DNA of 64,000 nt, taken from positions 1 to 64,000 of IMG/VR virus record IMGVR_UViG_3300009158_000031; one strand, given 5' to 3'. Below are positions 7,572-58,345 of this stretch, one piece after another; position 1 is the stretch's first letter; each line of letters begins with the position of its first letter. The position numbers were made by a program, and so were the translations under genes. The notes below the pieces were generated by a model that did no database searches, was not told where the DNA came from, and was given only the letters and a program-made list of their open reading frames with translations.

Positions 7572-8126
7572 ATGGCAAACTTAATTCTACTTGAAGGCTT
7601 ATCCAGAACAGGCAAATCAACTATTTCAAAATCGATTGCTGATGAATTTGGATTTCGTAATTTCTCCATTAAGACTAAGATGCCGGATTATGTACAAAAT
7701 TTACCTGATTTTTATCATGGTATGCACGTTTTAGCAAATGAATTATTCAGATCTTTTCCCCATGAAACTTTCATCTTAGATAGATCTTTTTTATCTGAGA
7801 TGGTTTATTCTCAATTTTTTAACAGACATTCATATATAAATAACGATCAAGTCATTTGCGATTTACTTCTAGATAACAAGTTTATACTTGTACTTCTAGA
7901 TAACAATCATCAAAATTATTTAGATCGTGGACCAAAAGATAAAATCACTTATTCTGAACAAGAATTTATTAAACAGAAAGATCTTTTCCAATGGCACTTC
8001 CATAATTTCCGTGACAAATACGATCCACAATCATGGCGAGATAGATTTTTACACATTGATACATCAATCACAACTCTAGAAGATACAACAAAACAAATTA
8101 AAACAAAGATAAAACAAGTATTATGA
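7572..8126 (+). CDS. dNMP (thymidylate-kinase-like) kinase
   Basis: P-loop LEGLSRTGKST and the ILDRSFLSE motif. Confidence 0.85.
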   Translation: MANLILLEGLSRTGKSTISKSIADEFGFRNFSIKTKMPDYVQNLPDFYHGMHVLANELFRSFPHETFILDRSFLSEMVYSQFFNRHSYINNDQVICDLLLDNKFILVLLDNNHQNYLDRGPKDKITYSEQEFIKQKDLFQWHFHNFRDKYDPQSWRDRFLHIDTSITTLEDTTKQIKTKIKQVL

Positions 8127-37043: not shown

Positions 37044-37291
37044 TGTATAAAGACAGTATCTATACGAAGATGTTAAATGAATCTTCTAATTTAAAATATA
37101 AAGGATTTGAGTATCAGAATACAAATATAATGGAAAAATTTGTTTCTAACCGAATGACCGGAAATCCAATAATGGCTGGATTTCTTAAATTACTTAGTCC
37201 AATTTTTATAAATTGGCTAGAATCTGTTAAAAGAGTTCAATTCTTTTACAACTACATAATTGATAAAAACGATAATAGTATAAACCGATAA
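37043..37291 (+). CDS. Small baseplate-associated protein
   Basis: TAATG coupling on both sides. Confidence 0.6.
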   Translation: MYKDSIYTKMLNESSNLKYKGFEYQNTNIMEKFVSNRMTGNPIMAGFLKLLSPIFINWLESVKRVQFFYNYIIDKNDNSINR

Positions 37292-40200
37292 TGTTCAAAT
37301 ATCTTAATTTTTTTAGTAAAGATGGTGAATATCTTTCATTTGATTACGACGAGACTACTGATTTTTGGTCTGGTCGAATTGACATGAATACGGTTTCTCA
37401 AGGACTAATAGAAGACTACCAAATTTATATAATGGAAGAGGTTTGGAATCCAAACCCTGGCCAAATCGAATATAGCTGGCCAAGATTGTCTACGATCGAT
37501 GGTGTTCGAGCTTACTTCAATGCCGATGGTATAGCAAAACCTCTATCGGATTATTCACCAGAATCATATGATGTTACTCAGATATTTATGTATGATCCAA
37601 TATCATCTACTCCGGCAGATGGTTTGAATCAAGTTCCAGAACCTTATGTAAAATCTGATTATGAATTAGGTGGTACTCCAGGAGCAACAGGAACTTATAT
37701 AATTAATCAAATATATGGTAATCCTTATTCATCTGGATCTACTGCAGTCGGTCAACAACCAATAACTATAGGTGCAACTATTGGATATGGATATAGCAAT
37801 ATAGGAGATTATCAACATGGATCTACCGGAGATTATCCATACATATCATATACAAATAATCCTTATAATAGAGCAATGCAAATCAATCTGGCTTTTAGAC
37901 CAGATGATGAAGATGCCTATAAAACATACTTATTTCTTGAAACTTTAGGAGGAACCGCTTTCGCTAAAATTGAAATATATGGTGAAGGTCTAAATGAAGA
38001 TGAACGTCTTCGTGCATTATTAGAAACTTTAGGTTATGATATTCTACCGAGTGATTCTATAATATTTGATTCATCAGATGTTAATGAACCAAACCCGGAT
38101 TGGAATTTGATTAACCGAAAGAGAAAAGAACTCATAAATGAACATTCGAATATCTTTCCTTTCTTAGGTTCCTATAAAGCCCTGATTAATATTATTAAGT
38201 TTTATGGATATCAAAATGTAAGAGTTAAAGAATATTGGAAGAATGTAGATTTACAATCTAAGAATTATGGAAAGGTTCGCCAAACAAATATTATTGATAT
38301 ATTTTCACCAGCTGCTAATTTCAATGATGCTAGAACTTTACCTAGTAAAATATACAAGAAGACTAATCAATTCGGTTTATTCTATGACATAACTGAGGCA
38401 ACTAATGAATTTGATGATGATGGATTGCCTATCGTAAAGGAATCCTTTACTTTTACTATTCAAGAAGTTTTAATTAAGCTATTTGCTTTAAAGAAAAAGC
38501 TAGAACAATTCTTTCTTCCACTCAATACCAGAATTATTGATATTGTTGGCGAAGCTATTTACTTTGCTAAATATGATATTAATGTTTGGAATGACCAATC
38601 AAGAATTGAAGCTGTTAGTTTAGGAATCAATCCAACAATAAGTATTATTCCTGGAATAACTGGTCAAATAGAAGATCTTCGTCCTCTATATTTCTATGGA
38701 GCGGCAGTTGGTCCAGATCTTACTGTAGGCGGAACTTCTAATTATTACTCATGGAATATTCAAGTAGGAAATACGGCTAGTACTGTAGGTCCTTTGAGTT
38801 CTATACAAACCTATTATTTGGATCTAGTTCCTGCCGGATCTACAACATATTATCGAGTTGCTACTACTGTTAAGACTGATGATGATAATGGAAAACAAAT
38901 TTATCCGGCAAATGTTATTGTTGATAAAATGATAACCGATTGGAAAGGTGCTACTGAATCAGTATTCCGTAATTATAACATTTTTCAAGAAGGAGGAACT
39001 AGTGGAGTAATGCGAATCGTATCTACAATCGAAGGTGCTAGTGGAACAGTATTTGCTGGATGGTATTCTAATACAACTACCGCAATTCCTTCAGGAACTT
39101 ACCTATCACCTGGACTTACTGGTGGTACTGCAACATATATTGATATTTCCCCAAACGGAACATTCGGTCCAACCGGTGCATCTATTGGATATTATGGAAG
39201 TGCATTCATTGGATATTTCGATGGATTAAACCGAACAGTATACGAACTTAATGATGAACCTGATATTCCGGTTGGATATTCAATAGTTCTTCAAAATGAT
39301 ACATTTGATTTAACATGGGATGAAGCTGAAGTATCATATAATCAATTAGATATCGTTGGATCAACCGGTCCAAGTGCTGGATCTGGATATACTTTATTCT
39401 CATCATTTGATAATAGCTATGAAGTTACTGGATGGACATCGGTGAGTGGTGGACCTACTGGAGCTTATCCTATAGGTGCAACCTACATTAGTATACCGGT
39501 AGTTCAAGGTGCCACAGATTTTCCAACATCCCTTTATCCATACACAAATCAATATTCTTGGTATAATGTCGGTGATAGAGGATTCGTTGAATTAGAATGG
39601 AAAATTGAAATGGTTCCTGGAGCCGGTGCTACATTTACTCATACGTCACCAAGATTATCTGCAAGAGATGGATATCAATATCCTATAATCCTACCTTATG
39701 TTGGTAAATATCGAGTTACCCTTAAGATGTGGGATCTTTGGAATAATATGTCAATTAGAGTGAATGATGATTTCATTACGGTTAACGAAAGTGGAGCATC
39801 TGACTTTATTGGATGGTATCAGCAATTACAGAAATCCTACAATTGGAATGATGCTGATAGAAGATATCCAGTACAAAGTGATTATTCAATATTATCAGAA
39901 GAATGGAAAGATTCACATAAACCAGTTTTACGATGGAAAGATTATAATTCTACATGGGCATTACCTTTCCATCCTAATGAAGAGATTGGTATGTGTGACC
40001 TTACATATGACACATTAGACACAATCGAATTTTATCAATCTAAAACTAATACTAATTACGTCGATAATTACATTGACAAATTTCCTTACACATGGGATCT
40101 AGTAGGTGATTGGATGTCATGGTTCGATGGTTATCATTTATGGTGGGATGGAACTGGACCCAAGTTCAGTCAAGCTATTGTAAATTCTTTAGGTTATCAA

Positions 40201-41376
40201 ACTGGATCTACTGGATCTACTGCATATATGTATGTGTCTAGAGGAAACAGTACATTAAATATAAATGAAGGAACTCAAATACTTTGGACTGATGGTCCAA
40301 CAGGATTTAGTGGTCCAACCGGTGCTAGTGCTGCTCCATCTGGAGGAACTGGATCTATCATTTATTCTGCATCTAATGCTAGGGTTTATGTTTGGAATGG
40401 AACCGAATGGAAATATAGTAATGAGGATCTAGATGGTATTGCGATTCCTAATGTAACTTCCGGTTCAACTTCAGGATATATTGAAGCCATTAAGAAGATA
40501 AATGGTATTGGAGAAACTAATCCACATAACGTATTCCCTGATCTAATTGGATATTACGATGAGGTTTATGATACAAGCTACATACCTCAACCTAGAATTA
40601 CTTTAGTATCGAGAGATTATAGTCATAAAGGTCAATATAAATTCAATTATGGATTTAATTATGCTATACCGGCTGGAGGAACTATGATCGCTGGTACCGG
40701 TACAGTAACTTCATTTGAAACTCCGTTCTTTGGATATGCTGGAGATATGCCCGCCACATTTGAAATTTATGAAATCAACGGATATTCTTCTATTTTAATA
40801 GGACCAACCACTTCAACCGGAATGATAGATCCATTTGTTACTGGAGCAACTAATTTAATAGATCTAGCTAAGTACTTAAATGAGGCATCTGATTTAGGTT
40901 ATCCTGGTTTGATGGAGTATACATATAATACTGTATATTCAGCACCTGGATGGACCGGTGGAGCAGGACCTACTTCGTCAATACCTGTAAAAATACAGGC
41001 AATTGCCAAAGCCTTTACTTCCCCATTTCATGTAGATGTTGAATATACTGGTAACATTGTAGGTACAACTTATGGAAGACCATCAATACAAAATATTGAT
41101 TGGGATGCTATTAGAATACTTAAATATCGTGAAATTCTACCAAGAATGACACTTTTGAGCTTCTGTTATGATAATTCAAAAATGAAAGGAAAGAAAAATC
41201 CTGTATGGATTATCACAAGAGAAGGAAGTAATTCTACTGAGAATATATACTATAATAATCAGTACTTTTCGTACTTATTTAGAGATTCAGGAGATTATAC
41301 AATATCTCTTCAACTTGAAGATACTAACGGAAACATAAGTAAAATAGATAAAAAACAAATAATAAAAATTGTATAA
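37291..41376 (+). CDS. Large baseplate wedge protein (gp7-like) with Ig/PKD-like domains
   Basis: GSYKALINIIKFYGY gp7-like motif and PKD-like GKYRVTL / GDYTISL. Follows the gp6-like gene. Confidence 0.6.
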   Translation: MFKYLNFFSKDGEYLSFDYDETTDFWSGRIDMNTVSQGLIEDYQIYIMEEVWNPNPGQIEYSWPRLSTIDGVRAYFNADGIAKPLSDYSPESYDVTQIFMYDPISSTPADGLNQVPEPYVKSDYELGGTPGATGTYIINQIYGNPYSSGSTAVGQQPITIGATIGYGYSNIGDYQHGSTGDYPYISYTNNPYNRAMQINLAFRPDDEDAYKTYLFLETLGGTAFAKIEIYGEGLNEDERLRALLETLGYDILPSDSIIFDSSDVNEPNPDWNLINRKRKELINEHSNIFPFLGSYKALINIIKFYGYQNVRVKEYWKNVDLQSKNYGKVRQTNIIDIFSPAANFNDARTLPSKIYKKTNQFGLFYDITEATNEFDDDGLPIVKESFTFTIQEVLIKLFALKKKLEQFFLPLNTRIIDIVGEAIYFAKYDINVWNDQSRIEAVSLGINPTISIIPGITGQIEDLRPLYFYGAAVGPDLTVGGTSNYYSWNIQVGNTASTVGPLSSIQTYYLDLVPAGSTTYYRVATTVKTDDDNGKQIYPANVIVDKMITDWKGATESVFRNYNIFQEGGTSGVMRIVSTIEGASGTVFAGWYSNTTTAIPSGTYLSPGLTGGTATYIDISPNGTFGPTGASIGYYGSAFIGYFDGLNRTVYELNDEPDIPVGYSIVLQNDTFDLTWDEAEVSYNQLDIVGSTGPSAGSGYTLFSSFDNSYEVTGWTSVSGGPTGAYPIGATYISIPVVQGATDFPTSLYPYTNQYSWYNVGDRGFVELEWKIEMVPGAGATFTHTSPRLSARDGYQYPIILPYVGKYRVTLKMWDLWNNMSIRVNDDFITVNESGASDFIGWYQQLQKSYNWNDADRRYPVQSDYSILSEEWKDSHKPVLRWKDYNSTWALPFHPNEEIGMCDLTYDTLDTIEFYQSKTNTNYVDNYIDKFPYTWDLVGDWMSWFDGYHLWWDGTGPKFSQAIVNSLGYQTGSTGSTAYMYVSRGNSTLNINEGTQILWTDGPTGFSGPTGASAAPSGGTGSIIYSASNARVYVWNGTEWKYSNEDLDGIAIPNVTSGSTSGYIEAIKKINGIGETNPHNVFPDLIGYYDEVYDTSYIPQPRITLVSRDYSHKGQYKFNYGFNYAIPAGGTMIAGTGTVTSFETPFFGYAGDMPATFEIYEINGYSSILIGPTTSTGMIDPFVTGATNLIDLAKYLNEASDLGYPGLMEYTYNTVYSAPGWTGGAGPTSSIPVKIQAIAKAFTSPFHVDVEYTGNIVGTTYGRPSIQNIDWDAIRILKYREILPRMTLLSFCYDNSKMKGKKNPVWIITREGSNSTENIYYNNQYFSYLFRDSGDYTISLQLEDTNGNISKIDKKQIIKIV

Positions 41377-41379
41377 AAA

Positions 41380-41952
41380 ATGAGTATTTCAATAACCTCG
41401 CTTAACGGAACTGATGCACTATCATCATCTAGAATAACCATTAACGACAACTTTGCAACAATTAGTGATGCATTAAATTCAGTACTCGCTATCATTGATA
41501 TTTCAACCGGTAAGATTAATAATTCTGCCTATGGAAGTGATAACGATATTGAAACCGAAGATCTAATTGTTAGAGGATCAACTGGTGGTGGTATTACAGT
41601 TATTACCGGAAGTGTTACAGTCAATAATGGAAATGTAATTTCTGGTGGATATGTTGAATTAGGTTCTGGATCAAATGTTAGATTTGAAAAAATTAACAGA
41701 GTATTTAACAGTTCTCCATCATCTACTATTCCGATAATTAATTTCTCGGGAACTGCTGGAACTGGTGGTGTTGGACCTGTTGGTGCAATGATTCTTCCTC
41801 GTTTAGCACTTGCTGATATTATAGACATTCGTTACCCACAAATTGGTGCGGTTGTTAATGTTGTTACTGGTGCTAGTTGCTATCCAGTAATATGTACACA
41901 ATCTGGAACTACTGGAACTTGGAAACCGCTTACCTTAGGTACAGCAATATAA
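41380..41952 (+). CDS. Short fibre/baseplate attachment protein
   Basis: N-terminal D-x-L-x5-INDNF motif (T4 gp9/gp10-like). Confidence 0.55.
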   Translation: MSISITSLNGTDALSSSRITINDNFATISDALNSVLAIIDISTGKINNSAYGSDNDIETEDLIVRGSTGGGITVITGSVTVNNGNVISGGYVELGSGSNVRFEKINRVFNSSPSSTIPIINFSGTAGTGGVGPVGAMILPRLALADIIDIRYPQIGAVVNVVTGASCYPVICTQSGTTGTWKPLTLGTAI

Positions 41953-41967
41953 TAAAATTAATAATTA

Positions 41968-44013
41968 ATGGCTACACCTTTATTAAGTCCACTAAGGGTA
42001 CAAGGAGGAACATTTTATACTTTCACGTCTTCAGCTGAAGACATTTCGAAAACGTTTACTGACGATGATACTCGATTCGTCTTTTCGAAGTATGCTCTCC
42101 TTGATATCCCAGATGTAAGAACTCCATCTAATAATCGAGAAAATTATCTTGTATGGGAAGGGATTGGATCCGTTGCAGCTGGTGGAACTTCATCCGTAGC
42201 CACTTTATCAATAGATGATAATATTAATGCGGCAGAATCTCTTCAAAATTATTTACTTAATTTTGAACAATTAATCCTAGAAGGAAGTAATACTTTAGCT
42301 AGAGGATATAATCAATCTGAACTATACACAGTTTCTGAACGTTTGTTTTGGCGATGGTTAGCTCAAGTAAATGCCATTCGTTTTAAAAATGCCACTGCAT
42401 CTGAAAGTGCAGCCGGTACAAGATATACTGAAGAAGATTCTTCATCAGTTTATAATAAAGTTGTTAAATATCTAGGCGATATTGACATTATCAATAATGT
42501 ATCTAGAGACGGTCATTCATATTCAGAAATTTATTTGAATGTGCCTACTCAACATGGAAATACTCCATTTGCTCTATTCAAAACTTACCAAGATTATAAT
42601 TACTTCCCTGGAGGAATTTGGTCTAATGGAAACACTTATATTGATGGTCGTGATTCTGGATCTACTTCACCAAGTGGTTTAGATTTAAGAGCTTATTATG
42701 ATAGTGATTTAACTGATTATTACTCTACCGGTGCCACATTTGGTATGGTAACTAACAATTCAGGTTTTGCTAAAATTTCAGGAGGTAGTGCTAAACCAGT
42801 ACTCATATCTAATATGGATGGTGCTATCCTGGATTTTGAAGCCGCTTCATATCGTCCTATCGTTGATGATCCAGGTATTAATATCATTCCTGAATGGAAT
42901 GCCAGTGGTGCTGCTGGAGACTTCTCATTTAATGCAGTTCTAGTTTATTATGATGTTTATCAATCATCCAATCCTACAGTAAGAGCAAGAAACCTTTATG
43001 GTATTCTATTCCTAGATGATTATACTAACGCTTCATCTAGTTTCTCATATCTAAAAAGATTCGATAAATACAAACCAAATGCCATTACCAAACTAAATGG
43101 TAATTCATATGGATTGAAGCTAAATCTAAAATTTGATACATCTGCTGATAATGTTGGAGTTGAAACTGTAATCAATGATTACAATACATTTTCTATGGAT
43201 TTATTCATTGATGCTTCTGTTAGATTACAAGAAGCCGGTGAAATGTTTTTGCGACAAAGAAATGACGTTTCAGAAATCCGTCAAGAAATTTTAAATTTAA
43301 AAAATGTTGCATATTCTCAAGGCGGTTTAGATCTTTTAGCTCAAAGACTTTCTCTTCTGGAAAAACAATTAAATAATGCTAGATTAGCATTCTCTAGTGA
43401 AACTTCGTTATTAGATCTAATTGATAAAAATTCAGAGGATATTAGTAATATTCTTTCTGGAAGAACTAGTATTAGTTTAACCTATGATCTTGGTACTTTT
43501 ATGCCAGGTCCTGGAATTCTAATAGACAAATCAATACCTAATCAAATAAAGATTATCAATCGTAAACAAAATTACGATAATTTCGTTATTTGTAAGAATA
43601 CATCCGGACAATTGCTTACCGATGTAAATAATGGTCGAGTGGTTACTTCAACTACAAACGGAAACGTTTTAACTTTAGGTACATTTACCAATTACTTTAA
43701 ACAAAAAAATACAAATGCTGATCCTGATACTGGTATTGAAACTTTACAAGATTCTTTGTATATAAATATAGACGATACAAACGTTAAGTGGAAAAAAGGT
43801 CAAACTTTTAGATTAGTATTTAATGACCCTATAGCAACCGATGGCTACAACATGGTTTTCCGAACAGACGCTGCTAATACTTTAGGCGGTGGTGCCTATG
43901 GAAAAATAATTTATACCGTACTTACATCAGAATTATTATCATCAAAACCTATAATTGAAATTACTTGTACTGATGATAGTGGTTTCAATTTCGAATTAGA
44001 CATATTAAGATAA
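41968..44013 (+). CDS. Virion structural protein
   Basis: 681 aa in the structural module, with a central coiled coil. Confidence 0.6.
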   Translation: MATPLLSPLRVQGGTFYTFTSSAEDISKTFTDDDTRFVFSKYALLDIPDVRTPSNNRENYLVWEGIGSVAAGGTSSVATLSIDDNINAAESLQNYLLNFEQLILEGSNTLARGYNQSELYTVSERLFWRWLAQVNAIRFKNATASESAAGTRYTEEDSSSVYNKVVKYLGDIDIINNVSRDGHSYSEIYLNVPTQHGNTPFALFKTYQDYNYFPGGIWSNGNTYIDGRDSGSTSPSGLDLRAYYDSDLTDYYSTGATFGMVTNNSGFAKISGGSAKPVLISNMDGAILDFEAASYRPIVDDPGINIIPEWNASGAAGDFSFNAVLVYYDVYQSSNPTVRARNLYGILFLDDYTNASSSFSYLKRFDKYKPNAITKLNGNSYGLKLNLKFDTSADNVGVETVINDYNTFSMDLFIDASVRLQEAGEMFLRQRNDVSEIRQEILNLKNVAYSQGGLDLLAQRLSLLEKQLNNARLAFSSETSLLDLIDKNSEDISNILSGRTSISLTYDLGTFMPGPGILIDKSIPNQIKIINRKQNYDNFVICKNTSGQLLTDVNNGRVVTSTTNGNVLTLGTFTNYFKQKNTNADPDTGIETLQDSLYINIDDTNVKWKKGQTFRLVFNDPIATDGYNMVFRTDAANTLGGGAYGKIIYTVLTSELLSSKPIIEITCTDDSGFNFELDILR

Positions 44014-44014
44014 A

Positions 44015-47743: not shown

Positions 47744-47820
47744 TAAGATCTTATAGGTGATATATCATCTAATATCATAGAGTAGATCTATGAACTAAAC
47801 TAATTGGATAAATATATTGT

Positions 47821-50800: not shown

Positions 50801-53800
50801 GCTCAAATTTTGGATTTAAACTTCAGGCAAATTTAGTCAATCCTTTTAATTTTTGTCAATTCGGAATACCGGGTAATACAGGAGGTGGAACTGCTGGAGA
50901 TATGCCACTTTGGAGTTGTGGTGACGGAAGATTTAAAGTTGGTCCAGATATCGTCGCATACAATGGATTAGGTGCATTACTTACTGCTCAAGATATGTCT
51001 GGTGGAGGTGCATCTGCTGAATGGGTATTTCAAAATATTTCGACTGGAGCTACTACTGTAGCAGCGTTTGGTATTACTGGATCTTATTCAGATCATTATA
51101 ATGTTATGGACGGAAAACCAGTAGGTGCCTTATCTTTCTTTAGTGTTGGAGGAGCTGGATCTAGCGCATCCGTATATTTGGGAAAAGACATGGTGCTCAG
51201 TAATTATTTAGTAAGTAATTATAATACAACTAGAAAATATGTTATCGGAAGAAATATGTGGAATCAAAATGATTTTGCTACTCAATTCGGTAATTCATTA
51301 AATTTAGTATCTGCAACCTTTCCAGAATTCGGAGGAATATTTACTGCAACTTGGAATCAGGGAGATGATCCTATCTATAATGCCTCATTTGATATGCCAG
51401 GACACTCAATTTACATACCTGAGCAAACTGGATGTGTTGCTGCAATTCCAACCGGTACAAACACCGATTCATCAATATGGGGCAAAGCGACGAATTTAGA
51501 TACTGGTTTAATTGGACCGGCAAATCTAACATTCGATTATCGACAAATGTATTGGGATACGATTCCAGCAAGTGCTCCAACTGCCGGATATGGTTATGGT
51601 TTACCTAAATTTGATGGAATTGATGGTGAATTATACCTTCAAACTGGATATGCCATAGATGCTATTCAATCGAATAATTTTACTTTTCGATCAATATATC
51701 ATGTATGGAAGTGGAGTGCTAGTCTAAGTCAATGGCGATGGGAAGATCGTACTCTTTATGATAATGAAATAGCGGTTAAAACGGTTACATTTGAAGATAA
51801 ACCTATTTGGTTTGGTGTAGCTCCTCTAGGAGGAATTGAGGCAGTAGAAGCTAGTGGCACTGGAAACTTAAATACTGGAGGAACTATTTTCTCATGGGAT
51901 GAAGATAGAGGAATTCAAGTTCTTTATTATTTTGGTGGAACTGCTACAGTTCAACCAAGAGGTTCTTTGATTGACGATCCAACAAACTCGGGTTTTCATC
52001 GACTTTTCGGTTGCGCAAGTGGAGGACCTTTTAGTCTTGATCTAGATGCCCTTTATTCAACTGCTCTTCCGGCAAATTTTATGTTTCCTAAAGATAATAC
52101 TGGACAATTCCAAGCTAACAACGGTTCGATGTTTACCACAACATCCACTTTTGGAAGTGGTATTTTAGGAGGAATTTCGATTGGATCTTCGGCAAATCCT
52201 CATAGATTACATGGAGTATCATCCGCTGGAGGAATTGGCGGACAAGGAGTTGTATGGAGCTATGATGCTAATTTACCAATTAATGTTAGTACTTCATATC
52301 AAGTAGAAGCTAATTTTAAAGGAGCTACAAATGGAGCTAATCCTCTTTATGCTCCATTCCAAGGTCCTGAAGGATTCGTTTATGGAGATGTTTATAGCGG
52401 ATCCGATTTTGGATTAGGAGCTCTTTATAAAATTGCTCCGATTGCTCCTACTGGACAGGTTTGGTATGGAAATTTTGACACTAATTATATTTCCGGTTTA
52501 ACTGGATCCGGTACTATATTTGAAGATTATGATGGAGAATCCGAATTCGTTTCGATATCTGCTACTAAATCTGCGCAATTCCATACTGTTGGTAATACGG
52601 TAGTTGCACTATCGAATTATTCAACTGGCCTTATAGGATCTGTAGGAGCTAGTGCTGGTCCCTGGATTTATGGAACTAAATTTATAGGTTCCACTTCGTT
52701 ATCCAATCAATATCAACCAATGGGACCTACTGGAGCCAGTGTTGGAGGTACTTCTGGTGGATACTTCTATTCATTTAATCGAGTAAAGAATTTCCCTTGG
52801 TTAGGATCCACTGCAAATCCGGATTATTATGTTGTAAGTGGACAATCCACATTCGCTAATACTTCTGGAGCAACTTCAATTGTAATATCTAGAGGAATTA
52901 CTGGATTCTCACCTATAACAGATTACGGTATAATTAAACCGATACCTACTAGTCTTAATTTAGGTTCTGGTCCAGCATACTCAACATCGGCACATGAAAA
53001 TGATTTTGGATTATTATCTTTATGGACCTTAACTCAAGGAGGAAATCTTCTAAATTCAGTTATCGGAACAACTTCAGTCAATGTGGCATGGGGAAGTATC
53101 ACTTTACCAGGAGCTACTAATACAAGTCCTTCATTTGGAGAAGATCTAGAAATATTCCCAGTAGATATTCCTGATGAAAATCCATTTGTTCAATGGTGGG
53201 CGCTTACCGAGGAATCTAGAAACAATGTTACCGAAGCCGTTGGTGCTGAATCTCCTTTTACCATCACTGGAGGATTCCAAAAACTTATTGGTTTATACAA
53301 TGAATATGATGATACGGCAGATGACATAACAAATGAATATGATCGTCTAAAAGAAAATGACAATCCTACACTTTCAGTTTATTCTAGAGTAGTTCCATTT
53401 ATAAACAAATGGGTTTATGATAATGAATCAACTGACGTTAGAGAAAATGGATATCGTCTAAATGTCGATCAAGCATTCGGTATGTTCAATTTTACGCCTT
53501 CATTTGATGAATATAATAGAAATCCCAAGCTATTTACTCATGAATGGTATTATCTACAAGAATATCCCAAGTATATGACATTCGATGAAAAGCGAAATTC
53601 ATTTTCATATTTCGATTCAGCAATTATTAATCCTACTGGACCTACTGGTGATTATGCTTCTTATACAGGAATAACCGGATCTTCCGGTGGTGGTTTATAT
53701 AGTATAGTCGATGATTATTTCGTTGATTATTTCACTAGAGAAACGGTGGATGGAAATCCAGTGCCTAGAGATTTTAGATATTCAATATTCAATGGTGGAA

Positions 53801-55788
53801 ACGATTTTGCCTTTGCCGAAGCTTTATTTAGAGGAGCTAAGGTTGCAATTAAAGACCGAAGTGGTACATCTAATATTGATTATAATGTTGAGGAAATTAA
53901 AACAGTTCCTAGCGCAATATATGATGATTATAAATTCTCAGCAATATTAACTTATGGAGAATCTACTGCAATCAAAGCTATCAAAAATGATAAATGGAAA
54001 ACTTTAACGGTTTTAATCGAAGCTGATATGAATGATCCGCTTTTAACAAATTATGTTGGAGATCGTTGGATTGATCGTGCTTACTTATACTCGGCAAACG
54101 ACAAATATAGCTATGTTGGATATGGTGGTGCTTTTCAATATGCCGATATTGTAATTAAAGGATCTATTAATGGTTGGGTAGATACTGGAGAATATTTTGA
54201 AATTTATAGCGGAACGGATATTAATGGAGAACAACCGGATTTTAGAAATGATTTAACTCTTAATCAAGAAGGTGGATTCAATTCCGTATACCTAGCTAAT
54301 ACGGTAGGTGTAACTACATACATATATAAATTTGGAGGAATATTTGATATTTCTACTAGATCATTTAAATGTACAACGATTGAAGGTCTTCCACTCAATC
54401 CAACTTTAACGCCTAATGGTTATAATTCATATGTGAATATTCGAAATGCTTGGCCGGGTTCAGTGAGAGCAGATTATACAAAACCATTTCAACCAGGAAT
54501 TGGATCTCGGATATATTATGAATTCGGTGGATATAACGCATATTCTAATATCTTAACCGGTATTAGCTTTGCTTCTATTGCCGATGCATTTAATAGTGGA
54601 GATCCACATGTTCAATATATTCAAGTAAACGATGATGGTACTGTAGAATTTAATACATTTATGCTTTCAGTATTACCACCGGATGATCTTGTTAAAGCCA
54701 GTTATTTAGACATTGCTACATCTCAAGATAAACCTTCTGGTCTACAATCATCAGTTGATATTGGATTCGAATTAATAGGTGCACCAAGAGTAGAATTATC
54801 TAGAATGAACAGATATCGTGGAGAATATGTTCCCAGATGGTATGATGTTATTAAATTTGTAGATGAAACGGATCTTAAAGAAGAAGGTCTTCAATATCTT
54901 AATATTAATATATGGGATGTTCAACGTGGAGGAAGTGGAAGTACGGCTTCGCCATATTACTATTGGAAAGATGAATCGTTAGGAATTATCCCGAATCTTT
55001 ATGTTTATAAAGTTAATGTTGAAAATCCAAATATAGTTGGTGGACAAAATATAACTGGCTCAACTCGTTCAATATATCCAGCAATAGGAGAGATTTCTAT
55101 TGACCATAAAGACTTCTTTGTATTTCGTTCTAATTGGGATCCGTATTATTATTGGAAATATATACGACGTAATATATCTCAAGCGGTTATAGGTACAAGA
55201 GAACCTAAAGAAGAAAAAGCTTTTTTTGGATCTAAGGTTATTGCTATTCCGGATTCTCCAATTATTGAAAAATTTGATGGAGGAGCTATTGATAGAAACG
55301 ATTTTGGTCGAAGATCTACTAGGGCTAAAATCAAAACAATAACTCAAGATATTGTATTTGAAATAACTAATACTACTGCCATACAAAAAGAGTTAACCTT
55401 AGATGTTTATGTTACATCAGCATTAAGTAAATGGTTAATCTCCGAAGGATTTGGTGCTGAATTTACTAAATATATGGATCCTGATTATTCATTTGATCAG
55501 CGAACAATAGACGACGATATCACTAAATACATCGAAGAAAATATCTTTGATCGGTATGAGGTATCGAACATAACATTCTGGGAAAAGACTTATCAACCAA
55601 ATATTGTTGAACCTTTGATTCGATTAGATTATACAGATGCTCAAAAGAAAGATAATGGTTATGTGGTTTCGACTAATTTCCAAACCGTTCCTTTGGGAAA
55701 TAACCCATTGAATTTTAGCTTGATATATAAACTACCAACAGACAAGCAAGTGTCTATTTCTTGCACAGTCACATTAAATAAAAAATAA
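47821..55788 (+). CDS. Very large virion/baseplate protein with a beta-propeller-like insert
   Basis: 2655 aa; late motif at 47807; Asp-box TVDGGDTW and GloVer-like repeats. Confidence 0.65.
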   Translation: MANKILKRTSFGLIRTNPRLSTNVKIVASSSDELFLESIDSNPILSSSLYKGYGVQGYYSQDLFNFFNQGNAIPKNLLYEVYEEDGAISVKDRYKFQRDFTYALGSYPKNSKLYTEEFAAFAPLWLERDNIPDYFIIFRMDGPVTKNINTAEYSGIDKDTDPILDKLIKSPDLFFSNYIQKAKIIAQFDLTGNTNVGSYIRRHVNDPNFPEAPLYFSPEEGDLTYWQGISLDEGGFTRKSEPINTEYVLPDKTIIESEDFITFGFSRNSIVCANLLNMEFLFDDTEQEDYKFYRYFGMYVSEQELGQFTIDPDRLYADRFVENTQSPIPILPNVGDPTLAENQIQTNPKGLKVYPRIITGSTGIYSGRLLTWEETQKPRFGYLKDTLGNVYSIDNNYKWDSEYQNPGTTAKGDTYTDSSFLRVKDTTVNWAAFGGFQEPFKYITTQQNGLNGSANFAFDVLKKPKGKDQIRIKYINPTNSKASTKITTGNTFKALIDQYTIRGNSSLSAGTNDGNEYSTLGTTDQVASSIALAINNITSLITRDPSNFGEEILFEAVSQKSTVVVYYKNTSEIFNNIEFSIFADVLYAEDIPYSSPSSLSEWNQEQYLASPIFTSTGATYNASQMGFVYKYKFVGGNTKPGTRFIIEKDFVDNFLDQTDKTYVKTDKGYSTIVHEYSNYLDSPLYEGANIVGFTGLDKYYVLSITEKTHSLEIGSEGKIPLRKLIKNSVGYLSLMPIRDFDFDFFNTDYNKDGDASLDNLFEWELGEGVLGDGYVAGSYAGATSLLVTTKNAFTNQTLYPIPVGANSPSLRVVFAKSPTGEKGMTGALLNLHEIYTTVDGGDTWNIYQSLPAFDYIDLDWAENDIFMSSSSEEYPTIRKFSVTSTGASQLAIIKLMDYPNFGMRTLSAINEDEVVFAGTRTYPEPAEYPEYFPYQNQNELFFYNRPYGRWTTIGATAIAPITRADLGAEGIQGGIGQFASGDPQATSYQSAYIGSNFGFKLQANLVNPFNFCQFGIPGNTGGGTAGDMPLWSCGDGRFKVGPDIVAYNGLGALLTAQDMSGGGASAEWVFQNISTGATTVAAFGITGSYSDHYNVMDGKPVGALSFFSVGGAGSSASVYLGKDMVLSNYLVSNYNTTRKYVIGRNMWNQNDFATQFGNSLNLVSATFPEFGGIFTATWNQGDDPIYNASFDMPGHSIYIPEQTGCVAAIPTGTNTDSSIWGKATNLDTGLIGPANLTFDYRQMYWDTIPASAPTAGYGYGLPKFDGIDGELYLQTGYAIDAIQSNNFTFRSIYHVWKWSASLSQWRWEDRTLYDNEIAVKTVTFEDKPIWFGVAPLGGIEAVEASGTGNLNTGGTIFSWDEDRGIQVLYYFGGTATVQPRGSLIDDPTNSGFHRLFGCASGGPFSLDLDALYSTALPANFMFPKDNTGQFQANNGSMFTTTSTFGSGILGGISIGSSANPHRLHGVSSAGGIGGQGVVWSYDANLPINVSTSYQVEANFKGATNGANPLYAPFQGPEGFVYGDVYSGSDFGLGALYKIAPIAPTGQVWYGNFDTNYISGLTGSGTIFEDYDGESEFVSISATKSAQFHTVGNTVVALSNYSTGLIGSVGASAGPWIYGTKFIGSTSLSNQYQPMGPTGASVGGTSGGYFYSFNRVKNFPWLGSTANPDYYVVSGQSTFANTSGATSIVISRGITGFSPITDYGIIKPIPTSLNLGSGPAYSTSAHENDFGLLSLWTLTQGGNLLNSVIGTTSVNVAWGSITLPGATNTSPSFGEDLEIFPVDIPDENPFVQWWALTEESRNNVTEAVGAESPFTITGGFQKLIGLYNEYDDTADDITNEYDRLKENDNPTLSVYSRVVPFINKWVYDNESTDVRENGYRLNVDQAFGMFNFTPSFDEYNRNPKLFTHEWYYLQEYPKYMTFDEKRNSFSYFDSAIINPTGPTGDYASYTGITGSSGGGLYSIVDDYFVDYFTRETVDGNPVPRDFRYSIFNGGNDFAFAEALFRGAKVAIKDRSGTSNIDYNVEEIKTVPSAIYDDYKFSAILTYGESTAIKAIKNDKWKTLTVLIEADMNDPLLTNYVGDRWIDRAYLYSANDKYSYVGYGGAFQYADIVIKGSINGWVDTGEYFEIYSGTDINGEQPDFRNDLTLNQEGGFNSVYLANTVGVTTYIYKFGGIFDISTRSFKCTTIEGLPLNPTLTPNGYNSYVNIRNAWPGSVRADYTKPFQPGIGSRIYYEFGGYNAYSNILTGISFASIADAFNSGDPHVQYIQVNDDGTVEFNTFMLSVLPPDDLVKASYLDIATSQDKPSGLQSSVDIGFELIGAPRVELSRMNRYRGEYVPRWYDVIKFVDETDLKEEGLQYLNINIWDVQRGGSGSTASPYYYWKDESLGIIPNLYVYKVNVENPNIVGGQNITGSTRSIYPAIGEISIDHKDFFVFRSNWDPYYYWKYIRRNISQAVIGTREPKEEKAFFGSKVIAIPDSPIIEKFDGGAIDRNDFGRRSTRAKIKTITQDIVFEITNTTAIQKELTLDVYVTSALSKWLISEGFGAEFTKYMDPDYSFDQRTIDDDITKYIEENIFDRYEVSNITFWEKTYQPNIVEPLIRLDYTDAQKKDNGYVVSTNFQTVPLGNNPLNFSLIYKLPTDKQVSISCTVTLNKK

Positions 55789-55792
55789 GTAA

Positions 55793-58345
55793 ATGGCTAA
55801 CATTTCAATAAAAGAACTTTTTCCAGCGGATTCGCTAATAAATGCCGTTGAAAAAATAAATTTTAACTTCGATCAAGTAATTCTTGGTGGCGGTGGCCCT
55901 CAAGGAGATACTGGTGTTACTGGTCCTGCTGGTGGACAAGGTCCAGTAGGAGATCGAGGAAATTATTGGTTTGCTGGAACTACTTATGGAGGAGTTACTG
56001 GTGATGCCTATGGTAATCCATTAGAATTAGGTGATGGATTTGTAAGTAGTGGAGGAACTGTCTACATATACTCTTTTACTGGAGGTTCAACCGGATGGTA
56101 CAATACCGGAATTAGTCTTGTTGGTCCTAGTGGTCCTCAAGGAGTTACTGGTGGATCATTCGAATGGCAATATTTTAGAGGAGCTACCGACATTGGTGTT
56201 AACTCATGGATTGCTGCTACTGCATATGGTGCAACTACGACGGTTAGTTCAAATCGAGATATTATTTCGTATGTTGGTGCCGAGAAGAATATTGTATTTA
56301 TGGGATCTACTGGTTGGGCAATTGACCAACTTTCGGATTTTGGTTACTTCCCGACTGGATCTAATTTACAAAAACAGCTACCTACATTAACAGTAATTCA
56401 AAGATATATTGATGGAGATAGTGTTAGTGGAATTGCATTTGGTGCAGTAGGTTTAACTTCTGGTACTGCTGGAACACTTCCTACTTCAGGAGATCTTAAT
56501 GAACCGGTATCTGCTCTAGATTTTACATATTATGGATTTGAAACTACAACAACGGATCCTTGGTATAACGGAACTCTTATACAAAGAGCGGTTATTCACT
56601 CACCTAAAATGCCTATGGCAATTAAGATTGGTGGAACCACTCCTCTAGAAACACCGGCTAACCTTTATATAGAATCTCAATTCTTAAAATTTAACGATTA
56701 TCTAAGTGAAAAATCTTGGTTAACCGGAAACGATTCAACCGGATCTACTCCATTAGGTTTTCATCATATATTTTCAAAATCCGTTGGATTAAATCCTCTT
56801 TCAACCGGAGTTGGTAAACAAGGTGCTGTGGTACTTCAAGGAATTGATGGAACTTATTCGATAGGATCTTATCAACATCGATTGGGAAATACCATTATTG
56901 GTACTACTGCCGGTTTAGCTGGTAATATTGTTGCTGGATTAATTATATCAAGAGGAAATACCGGTGGAATTAGTGCATCAAATAATTACGATTCTCATAT
57001 ATCATTACATGCCGATAACACATCAAATGCAGTTGCAAAAATTATTGCTTCAACTGATGCGAATGGAATTCCTAGAACTCAATTTGCTTCGAGTCGTTTA
57101 GGTATTATTGGTGCTACTCCAGGAGCTACTGGATCTGCCGGATTTTTAAAAGGCGCTTGGAATTCAGAAAATTATACGCCTAAGGTTCCCTTTCACATCA
57201 TTCAAGATAGTGGAAATCTAAATACAATTAATGGATCAGGTGCTGGTATATCCAGTTTAACTCTTCCTGCAAATTTATCTGGTTTAAGAGTTTTATCAAT
57301 GACTGATGTTATTGATGCTCGAGGTGGTGGTCTTATTCATGGACTTACTCCAGCTTATAATATTACATCTTTATCAGGTCCAATGGGAGCTACTGTAATT
57401 TATTCATGGGATGATATTGTTCTAAGAACATTTGCTAGAGGAGCAACAAATATGTCTCCTAACATTTGGGTTAATCCTGGAGGAAGTGCAAATGGTGGAT
57501 CTTTAATAGTAGGTTTAAGTTTTCCAACTACTTCGTCTAATCTTTTAGGAGGAACCGGTCAATATATTAGATCTAAACTTGCCATTGGTGGATCAATAAC
57601 TGTAGGAGAGATTGCATGGCATAGAGATTATCAACCACCAACAAATGGTATTAGACTTCAAGGTTCTATATACCAAGGGGTAACCGCAAATAATCCAGGA
57701 GCTTCTGCATCATTTGATGGTTATGGATATTATGGAGGAACCGGAGGAATTGGATCTGAATCATTTTTAGCGATTGGTGATTCTACATTTACTGCTAGAG
57801 CATTAGGTGGATATAAATATTACCAATCACAAGTTGGAAATGGAGGAATTCCATCAATATTTGCTGGAGCATTCCAAGGACCTATAATTATTGAAGGATC
57901 TAATAAAACAACGGATGGAGCAAATGGTCAATTACAAGATATTCGTATAGTTAACTCAAGTATGTTTAATCATGCGGCTGCCTTAATTGGAGGAAAAGTT
58001 ATTATTGGAGGATCTGCATATTCTCAATCATGGTACACAAAAGACCCGTATTATACCGGTGGTTTAGTTGCTAATGTAGTTGTAGTTGGAGATCCAATAA
58101 CCGGAGCTACTGTATCAGGACATGGTTTAGGTTATCCTGAAACTGCTGCTCTATCAGTTAACTCAACAACTAAAGGTTTTGCACCACCGAGAATGAGCCA
58201 GACACAAAGAGTTGCAATGGGATCCGTCGCCCAAGGTCTTATGGTTTATCAAGTAACTGGAACTCCCGGTGCTCCTGGTCCTACTGGAGAAGGTTTATAT
58301 ATGTACACTAGTGCTGGATGGACTGGTCCAATGAGATTCTCGTAA
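55793..58345 (+). CDS. Tail fibre protein
   Basis: N-terminal DSLxxAxxKINxNF, short collagen segments, and a C-terminal STTKGFAPPRM...QGLMVY motif common in Bacteroidota fibres. Confidence 0.75.
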   Translation: MANISIKELFPADSLINAVEKINFNFDQVILGGGGPQGDTGVTGPAGGQGPVGDRGNYWFAGTTYGGVTGDAYGNPLELGDGFVSSGGTVYIYSFTGGSTGWYNTGISLVGPSGPQGVTGGSFEWQYFRGATDIGVNSWIAATAYGATTTVSSNRDIISYVGAEKNIVFMGSTGWAIDQLSDFGYFPTGSNLQKQLPTLTVIQRYIDGDSVSGIAFGAVGLTSGTAGTLPTSGDLNEPVSALDFTYYGFETTTTDPWYNGTLIQRAVIHSPKMPMAIKIGGTTPLETPANLYIESQFLKFNDYLSEKSWLTGNDSTGSTPLGFHHIFSKSVGLNPLSTGVGKQGAVVLQGIDGTYSIGSYQHRLGNTIIGTTAGLAGNIVAGLIISRGNTGGISASNNYDSHISLHADNTSNAVAKIIASTDANGIPRTQFASSRLGIIGATPGATGSAGFLKGAWNSENYTPKVPFHIIQDSGNLNTINGSGAGISSLTLPANLSGLRVLSMTDVIDARGGGLIHGLTPAYNITSLSGPMGATVIYSWDDIVLRTFARGATNMSPNIWVNPGGSANGGSLIVGLSFPTTSSNLLGGTGQYIRSKLAIGGSITVGEIAWHRDYQPPTNGIRLQGSIYQGVTANNPGASASFDGYGYYGGTGGIGSESFLAIGDSTFTARALGGYKYYQSQVGNGGIPSIFAGAFQGPIIIEGSNKTTDGANGQLQDIRIVNSSMFNHAAALIGGKVIIGGSAYSQSWYTKDPYYTGGLVANVVVVGDPITGATVSGHGLGYPETAALSVNSTTKGFAPPRMSQTQRVAMGSVAQGLMVYQVTGTPGAPGPTGEGLYMYTSAGWTGPMRFS

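What the first reader, a model, noticed from the sequence alone, without database searches (positions are those of the whole stretch)
37291..58345. Pervasive dispersed G-x-T/S motifs in virion proteins, a possible glycosylation sequon
Seen: the 1361-, 190-, 1242-, 2655- and 850-aa proteins are peppered with non-tandem GAT, GST, GPT, GGT, GIT, GLT and GAS tripeptides. Examples are GGTPGATGT, QTGSTGSTA, GPTGFSGPTGAS and GPTGASVGGTSGG. These cluster in variable inserts and look scarce in the enzymes; the collagens also carry GxT triplets. Known: some mycobacteriophages glycosylate their virions with their own GTs. Inference: selection for a recurrent short motif on exposed domains fits O-glycosylation sites for a phage-encoded transferase, forming a glycan shield or adhesion coat. 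Frequencies were not counted.
Basis: partly seen in the sequence, partly recalled or inferred. Interest (0 to 1): 0.75.

Follow-up and report, generated by a model that had tools for sequence, protein, structure and literature searches.

The report
Gly-x-Thr motif in phage fibre proteins
Three giant baseplate or tail-fibre proteins of an uncultured 254-kb phage carry twice as many Gly-x-Thr tripeptides as their composition predicts; these look like collagen-type triplets and may be sugar-attachment sites, because the phage encodes about ten glycosyltransferases, but no attachment has been shown.

Summary
The quoted strings are present. The enrichment is real but narrower than described. It is Thr-only: pooled over the 1361-, 2655- and 850-aa proteins, G-x-T is 99 observed against 47.6 expected (z 9.3), while G-x-S is 49 against 47.7. 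It survives local shuffling and is specific to that spacing. It concentrates in G-[A/S/G/P]-T (3.5x) and G-x-T-G (5.5x). The 190-aa protein shows nothing and the 1242-aa protein shows little.

In G-X-Y-G, X is Pro-rich and Y is Thr- or Gln-rich, which is the signature of prokaryotic collagen triplets. About a third to a half of the sites are conserved in orthologues and the rest turn over. T4 fibres show a weaker Thr-not-Ser bias; lambda shows none.

The genome, mostly outside the window, encodes about ten glycosyltransferases and sugar-nucleotide enzymes. One is a conserved SunS/GmaR-like GT-A enzyme with a TPR-like tail. It lies near a 105-aa protein packed with G-x-T.

My verdict is a structural collagen-like or turn motif (confidence 0.5). 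O-glycosylation of these Thr residues, as in BclA3/SgtA, remains plausible (about 0.3) and can be tested. Both structure models had low confidence, so surface mapping failed.

The parts
37291..41376 (+). 1361-aa protein directly downstream of the gp6-like baseplate wedge gene. It has the strongest G-x-T enrichment (35 sites vs 13.4 expected), including a run of four triplets, GPTGFSGPTGAS.
   Evidence: the central region matches phrog_28177; orthologues
41380..41952 (+). 190-aa protein with a fibre-like N-terminus (the INDNF motif). G-x-T is not enriched (3 vs 2.6).
41968..44013 (+). 681-aa structural-module protein with weak, non-significant enrichment (8 vs 4.7).
44015..47743 (+). 1242-aa protein (phrog_29329) with weak enrichment (10 vs 6.2, z 1.7). 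Its orthologues are not enriched.
47821..55788 (+). 2655-aa protein (N-terminus matches phrog_31887). G-x-T is 36 vs 20.7 (z 3.7), densest at aa 1450-1770.
55793..58345 (+). 850-aa fibre protein. It has an INFNFD N-terminus, nine uninterrupted Gly-X-Y triplets at aa 32-58 and further runs of four triplets. G-x-T is 28 vs 13.7 (z 4.5).
18653..19915 (+). Collagen-like tail-fibre protein (420 aa, 22% Gly). The Y position is mostly Gln; G-x-T is 12 vs 6.2.
16966..17955 (+). 329-aa protein with a STELLO-type glycosyltransferase domain, 0.7 kb upstream of the collagen-like fibre gene. It is the only glycosyltransferase-like gene found inside the window.
   Evidence: PF03385, E 6.5e-11, aa 220-323
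35268..37043 (+). gp6-like baseplate wedge subunit. It anchors the region as the baseplate and fibre module. G-x-T is not enriched (2 vs 2.3).

Best explanation
The enriched element is a short protein-level motif, Gly-[Ala/Ser/Gly/Pro]-Thr, often followed by Gly. It occurs in the very large, beta-rich and probably trimeric baseplate and fibre proteins of an uncultured jumbo myovirus.

Its primary role is structural. About a third of the copies are collagen-type Gly-X-Y triplets (Pro at X, Thr or Gln at Y), in runs of one to nine. These would give polyproline-II or triple-helix-like connectors. The others are Gly-small-Thr turns at loop-to-strand junctions.

Shown: the statistics, the Thr specificity, the collagen-like X/Y bias, partial conservation, selection at the protein level, and restriction to certain protein families. 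Inferred: the trimeric state and the local conformation.

The same Thr residues could also be glycosylated, as in BclA-type collagens. That is treated as the first rival.
For: G.T is the only outlier among 400 gap-1 pairs (99 vs 47.6, z 9.3), and G.S is flat.

G..G is 91 vs 64, and nearly all of that excess is G-x-T-G (34 vs 6.1). X is Pro at 14 vs 3.6; Y is Thr or Gln.

The 850-aa protein has a genuine run of nine triplets and several runs of four. The 1361-aa protein has a run of four.

10-11 of 35 sites in the 1361-aa protein are invariant in orthologues of 42% identity. Thr within G-x-T is more conserved than other Thr: 0.80 vs 0.62 and 0.49 vs 0.30. In the 850-aa family it is replaced by Ile or Val as often as by Ser.

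At 52% identity, the 850-aa orthologues share 15 sites. The 12-13 unshared sites roughly equal the chance expectation, so the excess is a conserved core.

T4 distal fibres show the same Thr-not-Ser bias more weakly: G.T 60 vs 43.6 and G.S 27 vs 43.3. A relative's fibre proteins carry GGTLTG-type motifs.

The enrichment follows protein family (orthologues of the 1361-, 850- and 2655-aa proteins). It does not extend to virion proteins in general.
Against: The enrichment (G[ASGP]T 3.5x, G.TG 5.5x) is well above T4 (1.7x, 1.4x) and lambda (none).

The 1361-aa lineage gained about 24 sites, many at positions where orthologues have Asp, Asn or Ser, and this exceeds chance.

Isolated single triplets cannot form a collagen helix on their own.

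The structural context is unverified. The AlphaFold models had pLDDT 42 and 47.

The genome's glycosylation genes give the Thr residues an obvious alternative purpose.
Confidence: 0.5

Rival explanations
1. The motif Thr residues are O-glycosylation acceptor sites, and their number is maintained by selection for a glycan coat on the fibres. The initiating enzyme would be the conserved SunS/GmaR-like GT-A enzyme with a TPR-like tail at genome 181260-182441. The STELLO-like enzyme beside the collagen gene is another candidate. The GT2, GT10, GT11 and GT32-like enzymes and the GDP-6-deoxyhexose and amino-sugar pathways would extend the glycan. This would parallel C. difficile SgtA, which adds O-GlcNAc to Thr of the GPT triplets of BclA3.
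For: There are ten glycosyltransferase-like genes and many sugar-nucleotide enzymes.

The best solved relatives of the 393-aa enzyme are SunS and GmaR, which glycosylate a peptide and flagellin. Its only NCBIfam hit is the SunS family. Its C-terminal half looks TPR-like by Atlas features. A DxD motif is invariant.

SgtA has the same GT-A plus TPR build and acts on GPT Thr (PMC7157674).

The enzyme is conserved at 90%, 67% and 37% identity in three clades. In each it lies next to a small protein rich in G-x-T-G-x-T.

Lineage-specific sites accumulate in loop-like positions. In the low-confidence models, no motif Thr lies in a strand interior.

PTm1 and MaF61 lack the enzyme and lack the enrichment.
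Against: There is no direct evidence of any glycan.

Ser is not enriched, although SgtA accepts Ser in vitro.

Capsid-side virion proteins are not enriched, unlike the glycosylated mycobacteriophage capsids.

G002 has the enzyme, but its orthologue of the 1361-aa protein is not enriched.

The comparison across phages has six points and is confounded by phylogeny.

The complex prediction gave no answer.

Gene order is conserved generally in these phages, so adjacency carries little weight.

GT-A enzymes of phages also glycosylate DNA (bioRxiv 10.1101/2023.12.21.572611). Jumbo-phage glycosyltransferase clusters have also been read as modifiers of host polysaccharide (PMC7824862).
Confidence: 0.3
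2. The motif is a by-product of Gly- and Thr-rich composition, or of chance.
For: About half of the raw density difference between fibre proteins and enzymes is composition. Isolated G-x-[TS] sites reach only z 1.3-1.7 per protein.
Against: Local shuffles keep the composition, and the pooled z is still 9.3. Only this spacing and only Thr are affected. Orthologues reproduce the effect independently.
Confidence: 0.03
3. The motif is a DNA-level signal, such as a recombination linker, a restriction or methylation site, or a repeat, that happens to encode G-x-T-G.
For: Thr codons within the motif are skewed: ACT plus ACC make up 84% against 60% elsewhere (chi-square p 1e-4). T-even fibre genes are known, from my own knowledge, to recombine at short conserved motifs.
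Against: The 34 G-x-T-G sites use 31 different 12-mers, and Gly codon use is unchanged. Much of the codon skew is a general avoidance of ACA before a Gly codon, which is also seen at non-motif Thr.
Confidence: 0.03
4. The phage's glycosyltransferases serve other targets, namely glycosylated hydroxymethyl-pyrimidine DNA or host surface polysaccharide, and have nothing to do with the fibre motif.
For: There is a second ThyA-like gene at window 5474-6184. PTm1's counterpart is annotated as a pyrimidine hydroxymethylase. Phage GT-A enzymes are known to glycosylate DNA. The 609-aa enzyme with two GT-A domains resembles polysaccharide synthases and TarP. A review reads such clusters as surface-polysaccharide modifiers.
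Against: No Tet/JBP enzyme and no C5-methyltransferase were found. GT10 and GT11 fucosyltransferases and the SunS/GmaR-like enzyme are not the known DNA glycosyltransferase types. This rival concerns the enzymes and is compatible with the structural reading of the motif.
Confidence: 0.14

Closest known systems
BclA (Bacillus) and BclA3 with SgtA (C. difficile): collagen-like spore-surface glycoproteins
   Same: They have Gly-Pro-Thr-type triplets whose Thr is the acceptor. SgtA is a GT-A domain plus TPR repeats and is encoded next to its substrate (PMC7157674). Here the triplets are rich in Pro at X and Thr at Y. A GT-A enzyme with a TPR-like tail lies near a small G-x-T-rich gene, and a STELLO-like glycosyltransferase lies next to the collagen-like fibre gene.
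   Different: BclA proteins have long uninterrupted GPT arrays. Here most motifs are single or double triplets scattered through beta-rich proteins. The candidate enzyme is 120 kb from the fibre genes. No glycan has been shown. The context is a phage, not a spore.
Mycobacteriophage virion glycosylation (Che8, Rita; Freeman et al. 2023, as cited in PMC11256854)
   Same: Phage-encoded glycosyltransferases are proposed to decorate virion proteins.
   Different: In those phages the major capsid protein is the glycosylated protein named in the source I could read. Here capsid-side genes show no motif enrichment and the candidates are fibre and baseplate proteins. The primary paper was not available to me, so its site rules are not compared.
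SunS-family glycocin glycosyltransferases and Listeria GmaR
   Same: They are the best solved relatives of the 393-aa enzyme and its only NCBIfam hit. These enzymes glycosylate Ser, Thr or Cys of peptides or proteins in the cytoplasm (PMC12457901, PMC8620827).
   Different: The score of 53.9 bits is far below the family's equivalog cut-off of 350. No glycocin-like precursor, transporter or thiol-disulfide oxidoreductase genes were seen nearby.
Prokaryotic and phage collagen-like proteins (Gly-X-Y fibres)
   Same: They share Gly every third residue, Pro at X and Thr or Gln at Y, and location in phage tail fibres.
   Different: Only the 850-aa protein (nine triplets) and gene 18653-19915 have runs long enough for a triple helix. 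Pfam Collagen does not match the five proteins.
Autonomous glycosylation of giant viruses (chloroviruses, mimiviruses; PMC4691112)
   Same: The virus encodes GDP-mannose 4,6-dehydratase-like and epimerase enzymes, amino-sugar enzymes and several glycosyltransferases alongside collagen-like or fibre proteins.
   Different: This is a tailed phage of a bacterium. The acceptor molecules are unknown.

Membership tests
Collagen-like triple-helix proteins | An uninterrupted run of Gly-X-Y triplets long enough for a helix (roughly 6 or more) | tested here: inconclusive
   Met only by the 850-aa protein at aa 32-58 (nine triplets) and by gene 18653-19915. All other motif sites lie in runs of 1-4 triplets.
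Collagen-like triple-helix proteins | Pro-rich X position and Thr- or Gln-rich Y position | tested here: met
   In G-X-Y-G, X is Pro at 14 vs 3.6, Y is Thr at 34 vs 6.1 and Y is Gln at 7 vs 2.2.
Collagen-like triple-helix proteins | Match to the Pfam Collagen model (PF01391) | tested here: not met
   No Pfam family at E 0.01 or better for the 1361-, 190-, 681-, 1242-, 850- and 2655-aa proteins.
BclA/BclA3-SgtA-type Thr-O-glycosylated collagens | A GT-A plus TPR glycosyltransferase encoded in the same genome, beside its substrate | tested here: inconclusive
   A GT2 domain with a TPR-like C-terminus exists at 181260-182441. It lies beside a 105-aa G-x-T-rich gene, not beside the fibre genes. 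The TPR assignment rests on Atlas features only; Pfam finds none.
BclA/BclA3-SgtA-type Thr-O-glycosylated collagens | A glycan covalently attached to the triplet Thr | not testable with these tools
   This needs mass spectrometry or glycostaining of expressed proteins or virions.
SunS family peptide S/O-glycosyltransferases (TIGR04195) | Score above the curated equivalog cut-off | tested here: not met
   53.9 bits against a cut-off of 350. It is a distant relative only.
GT-A fold glycosyltransferase family 2 | PF00535 match above the cut-off, and a conserved DxD motif | tested here: met
   Six genes exceed the cut-off. In the 393-aa enzyme, D99 and D101 are invariant across 25 homologues.
Bacteroidota general O-glycosylation sequon | Enrichment of D-[ST]-[ALIVMT] | tested here: not met
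   12 observed vs 16.8 expected in the three proteins.
N-glycosylation sequon | Enrichment of N-x-[ST] | tested here: not met
   48 observed vs 49.4 expected.
Mycobacteriophage-type virion glycan shield | Capsid and tail-tube proteins as acceptors | not tested
   No modification data exist. The virion genes at 24.6-37 kb show no motif enrichment, but the sequon of that system was not available to me.

The most novel reading that the evidence does not exclude
An abundant group of uncultured jumbo phages O-glycosylates its baseplate and tail-fibre proteins on the Thr of dispersed Gly-small-Thr(-Gly) mini-collagen motifs. The GT-A plus TPR enzyme family has more than 2,700 homologues in metagenomes. 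Glycosylation would start with the conserved SunS/GmaR/SgtA-like enzyme, and phage-made fucose-type and amino-deoxy sugars would extend the glycan. This would be a phage counterpart of BclA spore-coat glycosylation and of giant-virus autonomous glycosylation, with a definable sequon.
Probability: 0.27. Interest if true: 0.78.

Novelty: new member of a known kind. Interest (0 to 1): 0.5.

Why it matters
If the motif is only structural, it is a useful sequence signature of fibre proteins in a poorly annotated phage group, where Pfam and PHROGs name almost nothing in this module.

If the Thr residues are glycosylated, this would be the first case I know of where phage tail fibres carry a defined O-glycosylation motif, made by a phage-encoded enzyme family that is common in metagenomes. 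Glycans on fibres would bear on host recognition, resistance to proteases and grazers, and how receptor-binding proteins are predicted from sequence.

Either way, the genome's sugar toolkit is unusually rich for a phage. It includes GT2, GT10, GT11, GT32-like and STELLO-like enzymes, a GDP-mannose-dehydratase-like enzyme, an NDP-hexose 2,3-dehydratase, aminotransferases and an acetyltransferase. Its target deserves an experiment.

Tried and rejected
Composition or chance: rejected by local shuffles and by the spacing and Thr specificity.

DNA-level motif: rejected, because 31 different 12-mers sit at the 34 G-x-T-G sites.

Bacteroidota O-sequon and the N-x-S/T sequon: not enriched.

A repeated domain around the motif: the position profile shows little beyond G-[ASGP]-T-[GA], and I saw no repeated unit when reading the marked-up 2655-aa protein.

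Surface mapping: AlphaFold2 with orthologue alignments gave pLDDT 42 (850-aa protein) and 47 (1361-aa protein, aa 440-1361). Neither could support exposure claims or fold searches. Only a crude secondary-structure tally was made.

Complex prediction of the 393-aa enzyme with the 105-aa protein: no answer, with a score of 0.07.

Annotation and similarity searches: Pfam gave nothing for the large proteins. Megablast against phage records found nothing. The PDB sequence search for the 850-aa protein found nothing.

Counting GT2 genes against enrichment in relatives: not discriminating.

The isolates PTm1 and MaF61 are too distant to be more than two weak data points.

The primary mycobacteriophage glycosylation paper could not be read.
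Full report
CONTEXT. The window is the first 64 kb of a 254,393-bp virus record. CheckV estimates it as 83% complete. GC content is about 33%, and my own greedy ORF picking (not a gene predictor) placed 313 of 322 chosen ORFs on the + strand. Protein-level relatives are Tenacibaculum phages PTm1 and pT24, Sphingomonas phage PAU, Chryseobacterium and Flavobacterium jumbo phages, Lak megaphages and uncultured huge phages. It is therefore a jumbo myovirus, probably of Bacteroidota. Gene 35268-37043 is a gp6-like baseplate wedge subunit. The tail sheath lies elsewhere, at 128909-132160. The finding's region, 37291-58345, follows the wedge gene and holds the baseplate-periphery and fibre proteins. 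Pfam names none of them, and PHROGs gives only families of unknown function.

THE OBSERVATION. All four quoted strings are present. I counted G-x-[TS] against shuffles that preserve local composition in blocks of 20-40 residues.
- 1361-aa protein: 47 vs 25 (z about 5).
- 850-aa protein: 42 vs 27 (z 3.7).
- 2655-aa protein: 59 vs 43.5 (z 2.8).
- 1242-aa protein: 20 vs 14 (z 1.8).
- 190-aa protein: 4 vs 5.3.
Only the one-residue spacing is enriched. Spacings 0 and 2-5, and the reverse order, are flat.

The signal is wholly Thr. Pooled over the three proteins, G.T is 99 vs 47.6 (z 9.3) and is the single outlier among all 400 residue pairs at that spacing. G.S is 49 vs 47.7, and Val and Ile are not enriched after G-x. 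The motif sharpens to G-[A/S/G/P]-T (60 vs 16.9) and G-x-T-G (34 vs 6.2). G-[other]-T is only 1.27x.

The rest of the genome has G.T at 1.24x. The virion genes at 24.6-37 kb are at chance, and the collagen-like gene has 12 vs 6.2. The DNA behind the 34 G-x-T-G sites uses 31 different 12-mers, and Gly codon use is unchanged, so the constraint is on the protein.

WHAT THE MOTIF LOOKS LIKE. Gly three residues apart is over-represented (91 vs 64), and almost all of that excess is G-x-T-G. Within G-X-Y-G, X is Pro (14 vs 3.6) and Y is Thr (34 vs 6.1) or Gln (7 vs 2.2). That is the residue signature of prokaryotic collagen triplets. The 850-aa protein has nine uninterrupted triplets at aa 32-58 and several runs of four. 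The 1361-aa protein has GPTGFSGPTGAS. Beyond G-[ASGP]-T-[GA] there is little flanking conservation: mild Thr, Pro, Ile or Val before the motif, and Tyr, Ala or Ser at +5. So it is a short linear motif, not a repeated domain.

EVOLUTION. IMG/VR holds full-length orthologues.
- For the 1361-aa protein, the 87%-identical orthologue has 37 sites vs 15 expected. Five orthologues of about 42% identity have 16-23 vs 8-10 (z 3-5). Eight of about 33% identity have 5-10 vs 5-7, which is not significant.
- Of the 35 sites in the window's copy, 33 are kept at 87% identity, and 10-11 are invariant at 42%. About 8 lie in insertions, and about 16 arose by substitution where orthologues have Asp, Asn, Ser or other residues.
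- In the 850-aa family the count stays at 25-32 from 83% down to 52% identity. At 52% identity 15 sites are shared, 13 are lost and 12 are gained. The unshared number is close to the chance expectation of about 13, so the excess is largely a conserved core.
- Thr within the motif is more conserved than other Thr. In the 850-aa family it is replaced by Ile or Val as often as by Ser.
- Enrichment follows protein family. Orthologues of the 1361-, 850- and 2655-aa proteins are enriched. Orthologues of the wedge protein and of the 1242-aa protein are not.

CONTROLS. In T4, I pooled gp34, gp35, gp36, gp37, gp7, gp10, gp12 and Wac. G.T is 60 vs 43.6 and G.S is 27 vs 43.3; gp36 and gp37 are positive and gp34 is not. 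G[ASGP]T is 1.7x and G.TG is 1.4x. Lambda J and Stf show nothing. A Thr-not-Ser preference after Gly-x is thus a mild general trait of some fibres. The strength seen here (3.5x and 5.5x) is specific to this phage group.

THE GLYCOSYLATION IDEA.
- Six GT2 genes at 64301, 141685, 172342, 181260, 194301 and 237829.
- A run of four consecutive genes at 171.7-174.6 kb: GT32-like, GT2 (the 172342 gene above), GT11 and GT10. An SDR epimerase and a DegT aminotransferase follow it.
- A cluster of NDP-hexose 2,3-dehydratase, oxidoreductase, DegT aminotransferase and PglD-like acetyltransferase just before the GT2 at 141685.
- A UDP-glucose/GDP-mannose dehydrogenase.
- A full-length GDP-mannose-4,6-dehydratase-like gene at 245813.
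- Inside the window, an SDR at 8123-9280 and a STELLO-type glycosyltransferase at 16966-17955, just upstream of the collagen-like fibre gene.
- No match to two GT-B family models (PF00534, PF13692) and none to NTP_transferase (PF00483).

The most telling enzyme is the 393-aa GT2 at 181260-182441. Its best solved relatives are SunS (a peptide S-glycosyltransferase of the SPbeta prophage) and GmaR (the Listeria flagellin O-GlcNAc transferase). Its only NCBIfam hit is the SunS family, far below the cut-off. Its C-terminal half resembles TPR proteins by language-model features, although Pfam sees no TPR. A DxD motif is invariant.

That build, GT-A plus TPR, is the one reported for C. difficile SgtA. 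SgtA adds beta-O-GlcNAc to Thr of the GPT triplets of the collagen-like BclA3 and is encoded next to it (PMC7157674).

The phage enzyme has 2,789 homologues in the metagenome protein set. Its orthologues in three clades are 90%, 67% and 37% identical. In each clade the same neighbourhood holds a small protein rich in G-x-T-G-x-T: 105 aa with 10 sites here, 102 aa with GLTGATGAT, and 315 aa with GVTGATGAT. PTm1 and MaF61 lack the enzyme, and their homologues of the 1361-aa protein are at chance.

WHY I STILL RANK THE STRUCTURAL READING FIRST.
- No datum shows a glycan.
- Ser is not enriched, though SgtA takes Ser in vitro.
- The excess is in large part a conserved core with a collagen-type residue pattern.
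- Capsid-side proteins are not enriched.
- The far clade has the enzyme, but its orthologue of the 1361-aa protein is not enriched.
- Gene order is conserved generally in these phages, so adjacency is weak evidence.
- The enzymes have other plausible targets. GT-A enzymes of phages glycosylate hydroxymethyl-cytosine DNA. This phage has a second ThyA-like gene (window 5474-6184), and the PTm1 counterpart is annotated as a pyrimidine hydroxymethylase. A review reads jumbo-phage glycosyltransferase clusters as modifiers of host surface polysaccharide. The 609-aa enzyme just past the window's end has two GT-A-like domains and resembles polysaccharide synthases.

The two readings do not exclude each other. 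In BclA-type proteins, structural GPT triplets are also the glycosylated ones.

WHAT FAILED. AlphaFold2 models of the 850-aa protein and of aa 440-1361 of the 1361-aa protein had pLDDT 42 and 47. The requested surface mapping could not be done, and no fold search was run on them. In those weak models, none of the 57 motif Thr residues lies in a strand interior and 68-76% lie in loops, against 52-53% of other Thr. This is suggestive only. The complex prediction of the enzyme with the 105-aa protein returned no answer.

VERDICT.
- Best reading: a collagen-type or turn structural motif (confidence 0.5).
- O-glycosylation sequon: about 0.3. This is higher than a bare motif would deserve, because of the SunS/GmaR/SgtA-like enzyme and the sugar toolkit.
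- Composition, chance or DNA-level causes are excluded.
- The sequon hypothesis can be tested directly by co-expression and mass spectrometry.

Noticed in passing
L014:17260-18441 (genome 181260-182441): A 393-aa GT2 enzyme whose best solved relatives are SunS and GmaR, with a TPR-like C-terminal half. It is a highly conserved core gene: 2,789 metagenomic homologues, more than 100 clusters at 50% identity or above, annotated only as a cell-wall glycosyltransferase.
   Followed up: yes
L014:16134-16451 (genome 180134-180451): A 105-aa protein with a fibre-like N-terminus and 10 G-x-T in 105 residues (GPTGMTG, GPTGGT, GFTGASGMTGQT). It lies 0.8 kb upstream of the SunS/GmaR-like enzyme. Counterparts with GLTGATGAT or GVTGATGAT occupy the same place in two other clades.
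   Followed up: partly
L014:7692-12713 (genome 171692-176713): Six consecutive sugar genes: GT32-like (DXD), GT2, GT11 (alpha-1,2-fucosyltransferase family), GT10 (fucosyltransferase C-terminal domain), an SDR epimerase/dehydratase and a DegT aminotransferase. A GDP-mannose-4,6-dehydratase-like gene lies at 245813-246739.
   Followed up: partly
L012:13689-18566 (genome 137689-142566): A cluster of NDP-hexose 2,3-dehydratase, GFO/IDH/MocA oxidoreductase, DegT aminotransferase, PglD-like acetyltransferase and GT2. This looks like a pathway for an acetamido-deoxy sugar, which is unusual in a phage.
   Followed up: no
L009:301-2130 (genome 64301-66130, 300 bp past the window end): A 609-aa protein with two GT-A-like domains: an N-terminal one with a DDD motif and a C-terminal GT2. 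It sits directly after the fibre module. It resembles heparosan and chondroitin synthases, TuaG, WcaA and TarP. It is present in the close clade (616-aa frame in G005); the GT2-family scan of the mid and far clades found no frame of that length.
   Followed up: partly
window 16966-17955: A STELLO-type glycosyltransferase domain protein 0.7 kb upstream of the collagen-like tail-fibre gene (18653-19915). This pairs a glycosyltransferase with a collagen gene.
   Followed up: no
window 5474-6184: A second, short ThyA-family protein (236 aa). It is 2.5e-76 to PDB 9iqu/9iqc and also similar to CMP 5-hydroxymethylase. It lies next to the NAD-dependent DNA ligase. PTm1's counterpart is annotated as a thymidylate synthase and pyrimidine hydroxymethylase. 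It may signal hydroxymethyl-pyrimidine DNA. A canonical ThyA lies at 204810-205871.
   Followed up: partly
window 37291-58345: Thr codons inside the motif are ACT or ACC in 84% of cases against 60% elsewhere (p about 1e-4). ACA is also avoided before Gly codons at non-motif Thr, so part of this is a codon-context effect.
   Followed up: partly
window 55793-55960, 41380-41500, and L014:16134-16260: The 850-aa, 190-aa and 105-aa proteins share an N-terminal motif of the type (K/I)-(I/F)-N/A-D/F-N/L-F/I-D, such as EKINFNFDQV, ITINDNFATI and TKFADLIDSAFN. It is probably a common baseplate or fibre attachment module.
   Followed up: no
genome 128909-132160 and 150265-154005: The tail sheath is unusually long (1083 aa, with the sheath domain at 716-1074) and mildly enriched in G-x-T (17 vs 10.7). 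An unannotated 1246-aa protein has 14 vs 6.9.
   Followed up: no
window 31463-32632: A 389-aa protein in the structural block ends in an S1 RNA-binding domain (E 7e-28). This is unexpected among virion genes.
   Followed up: no
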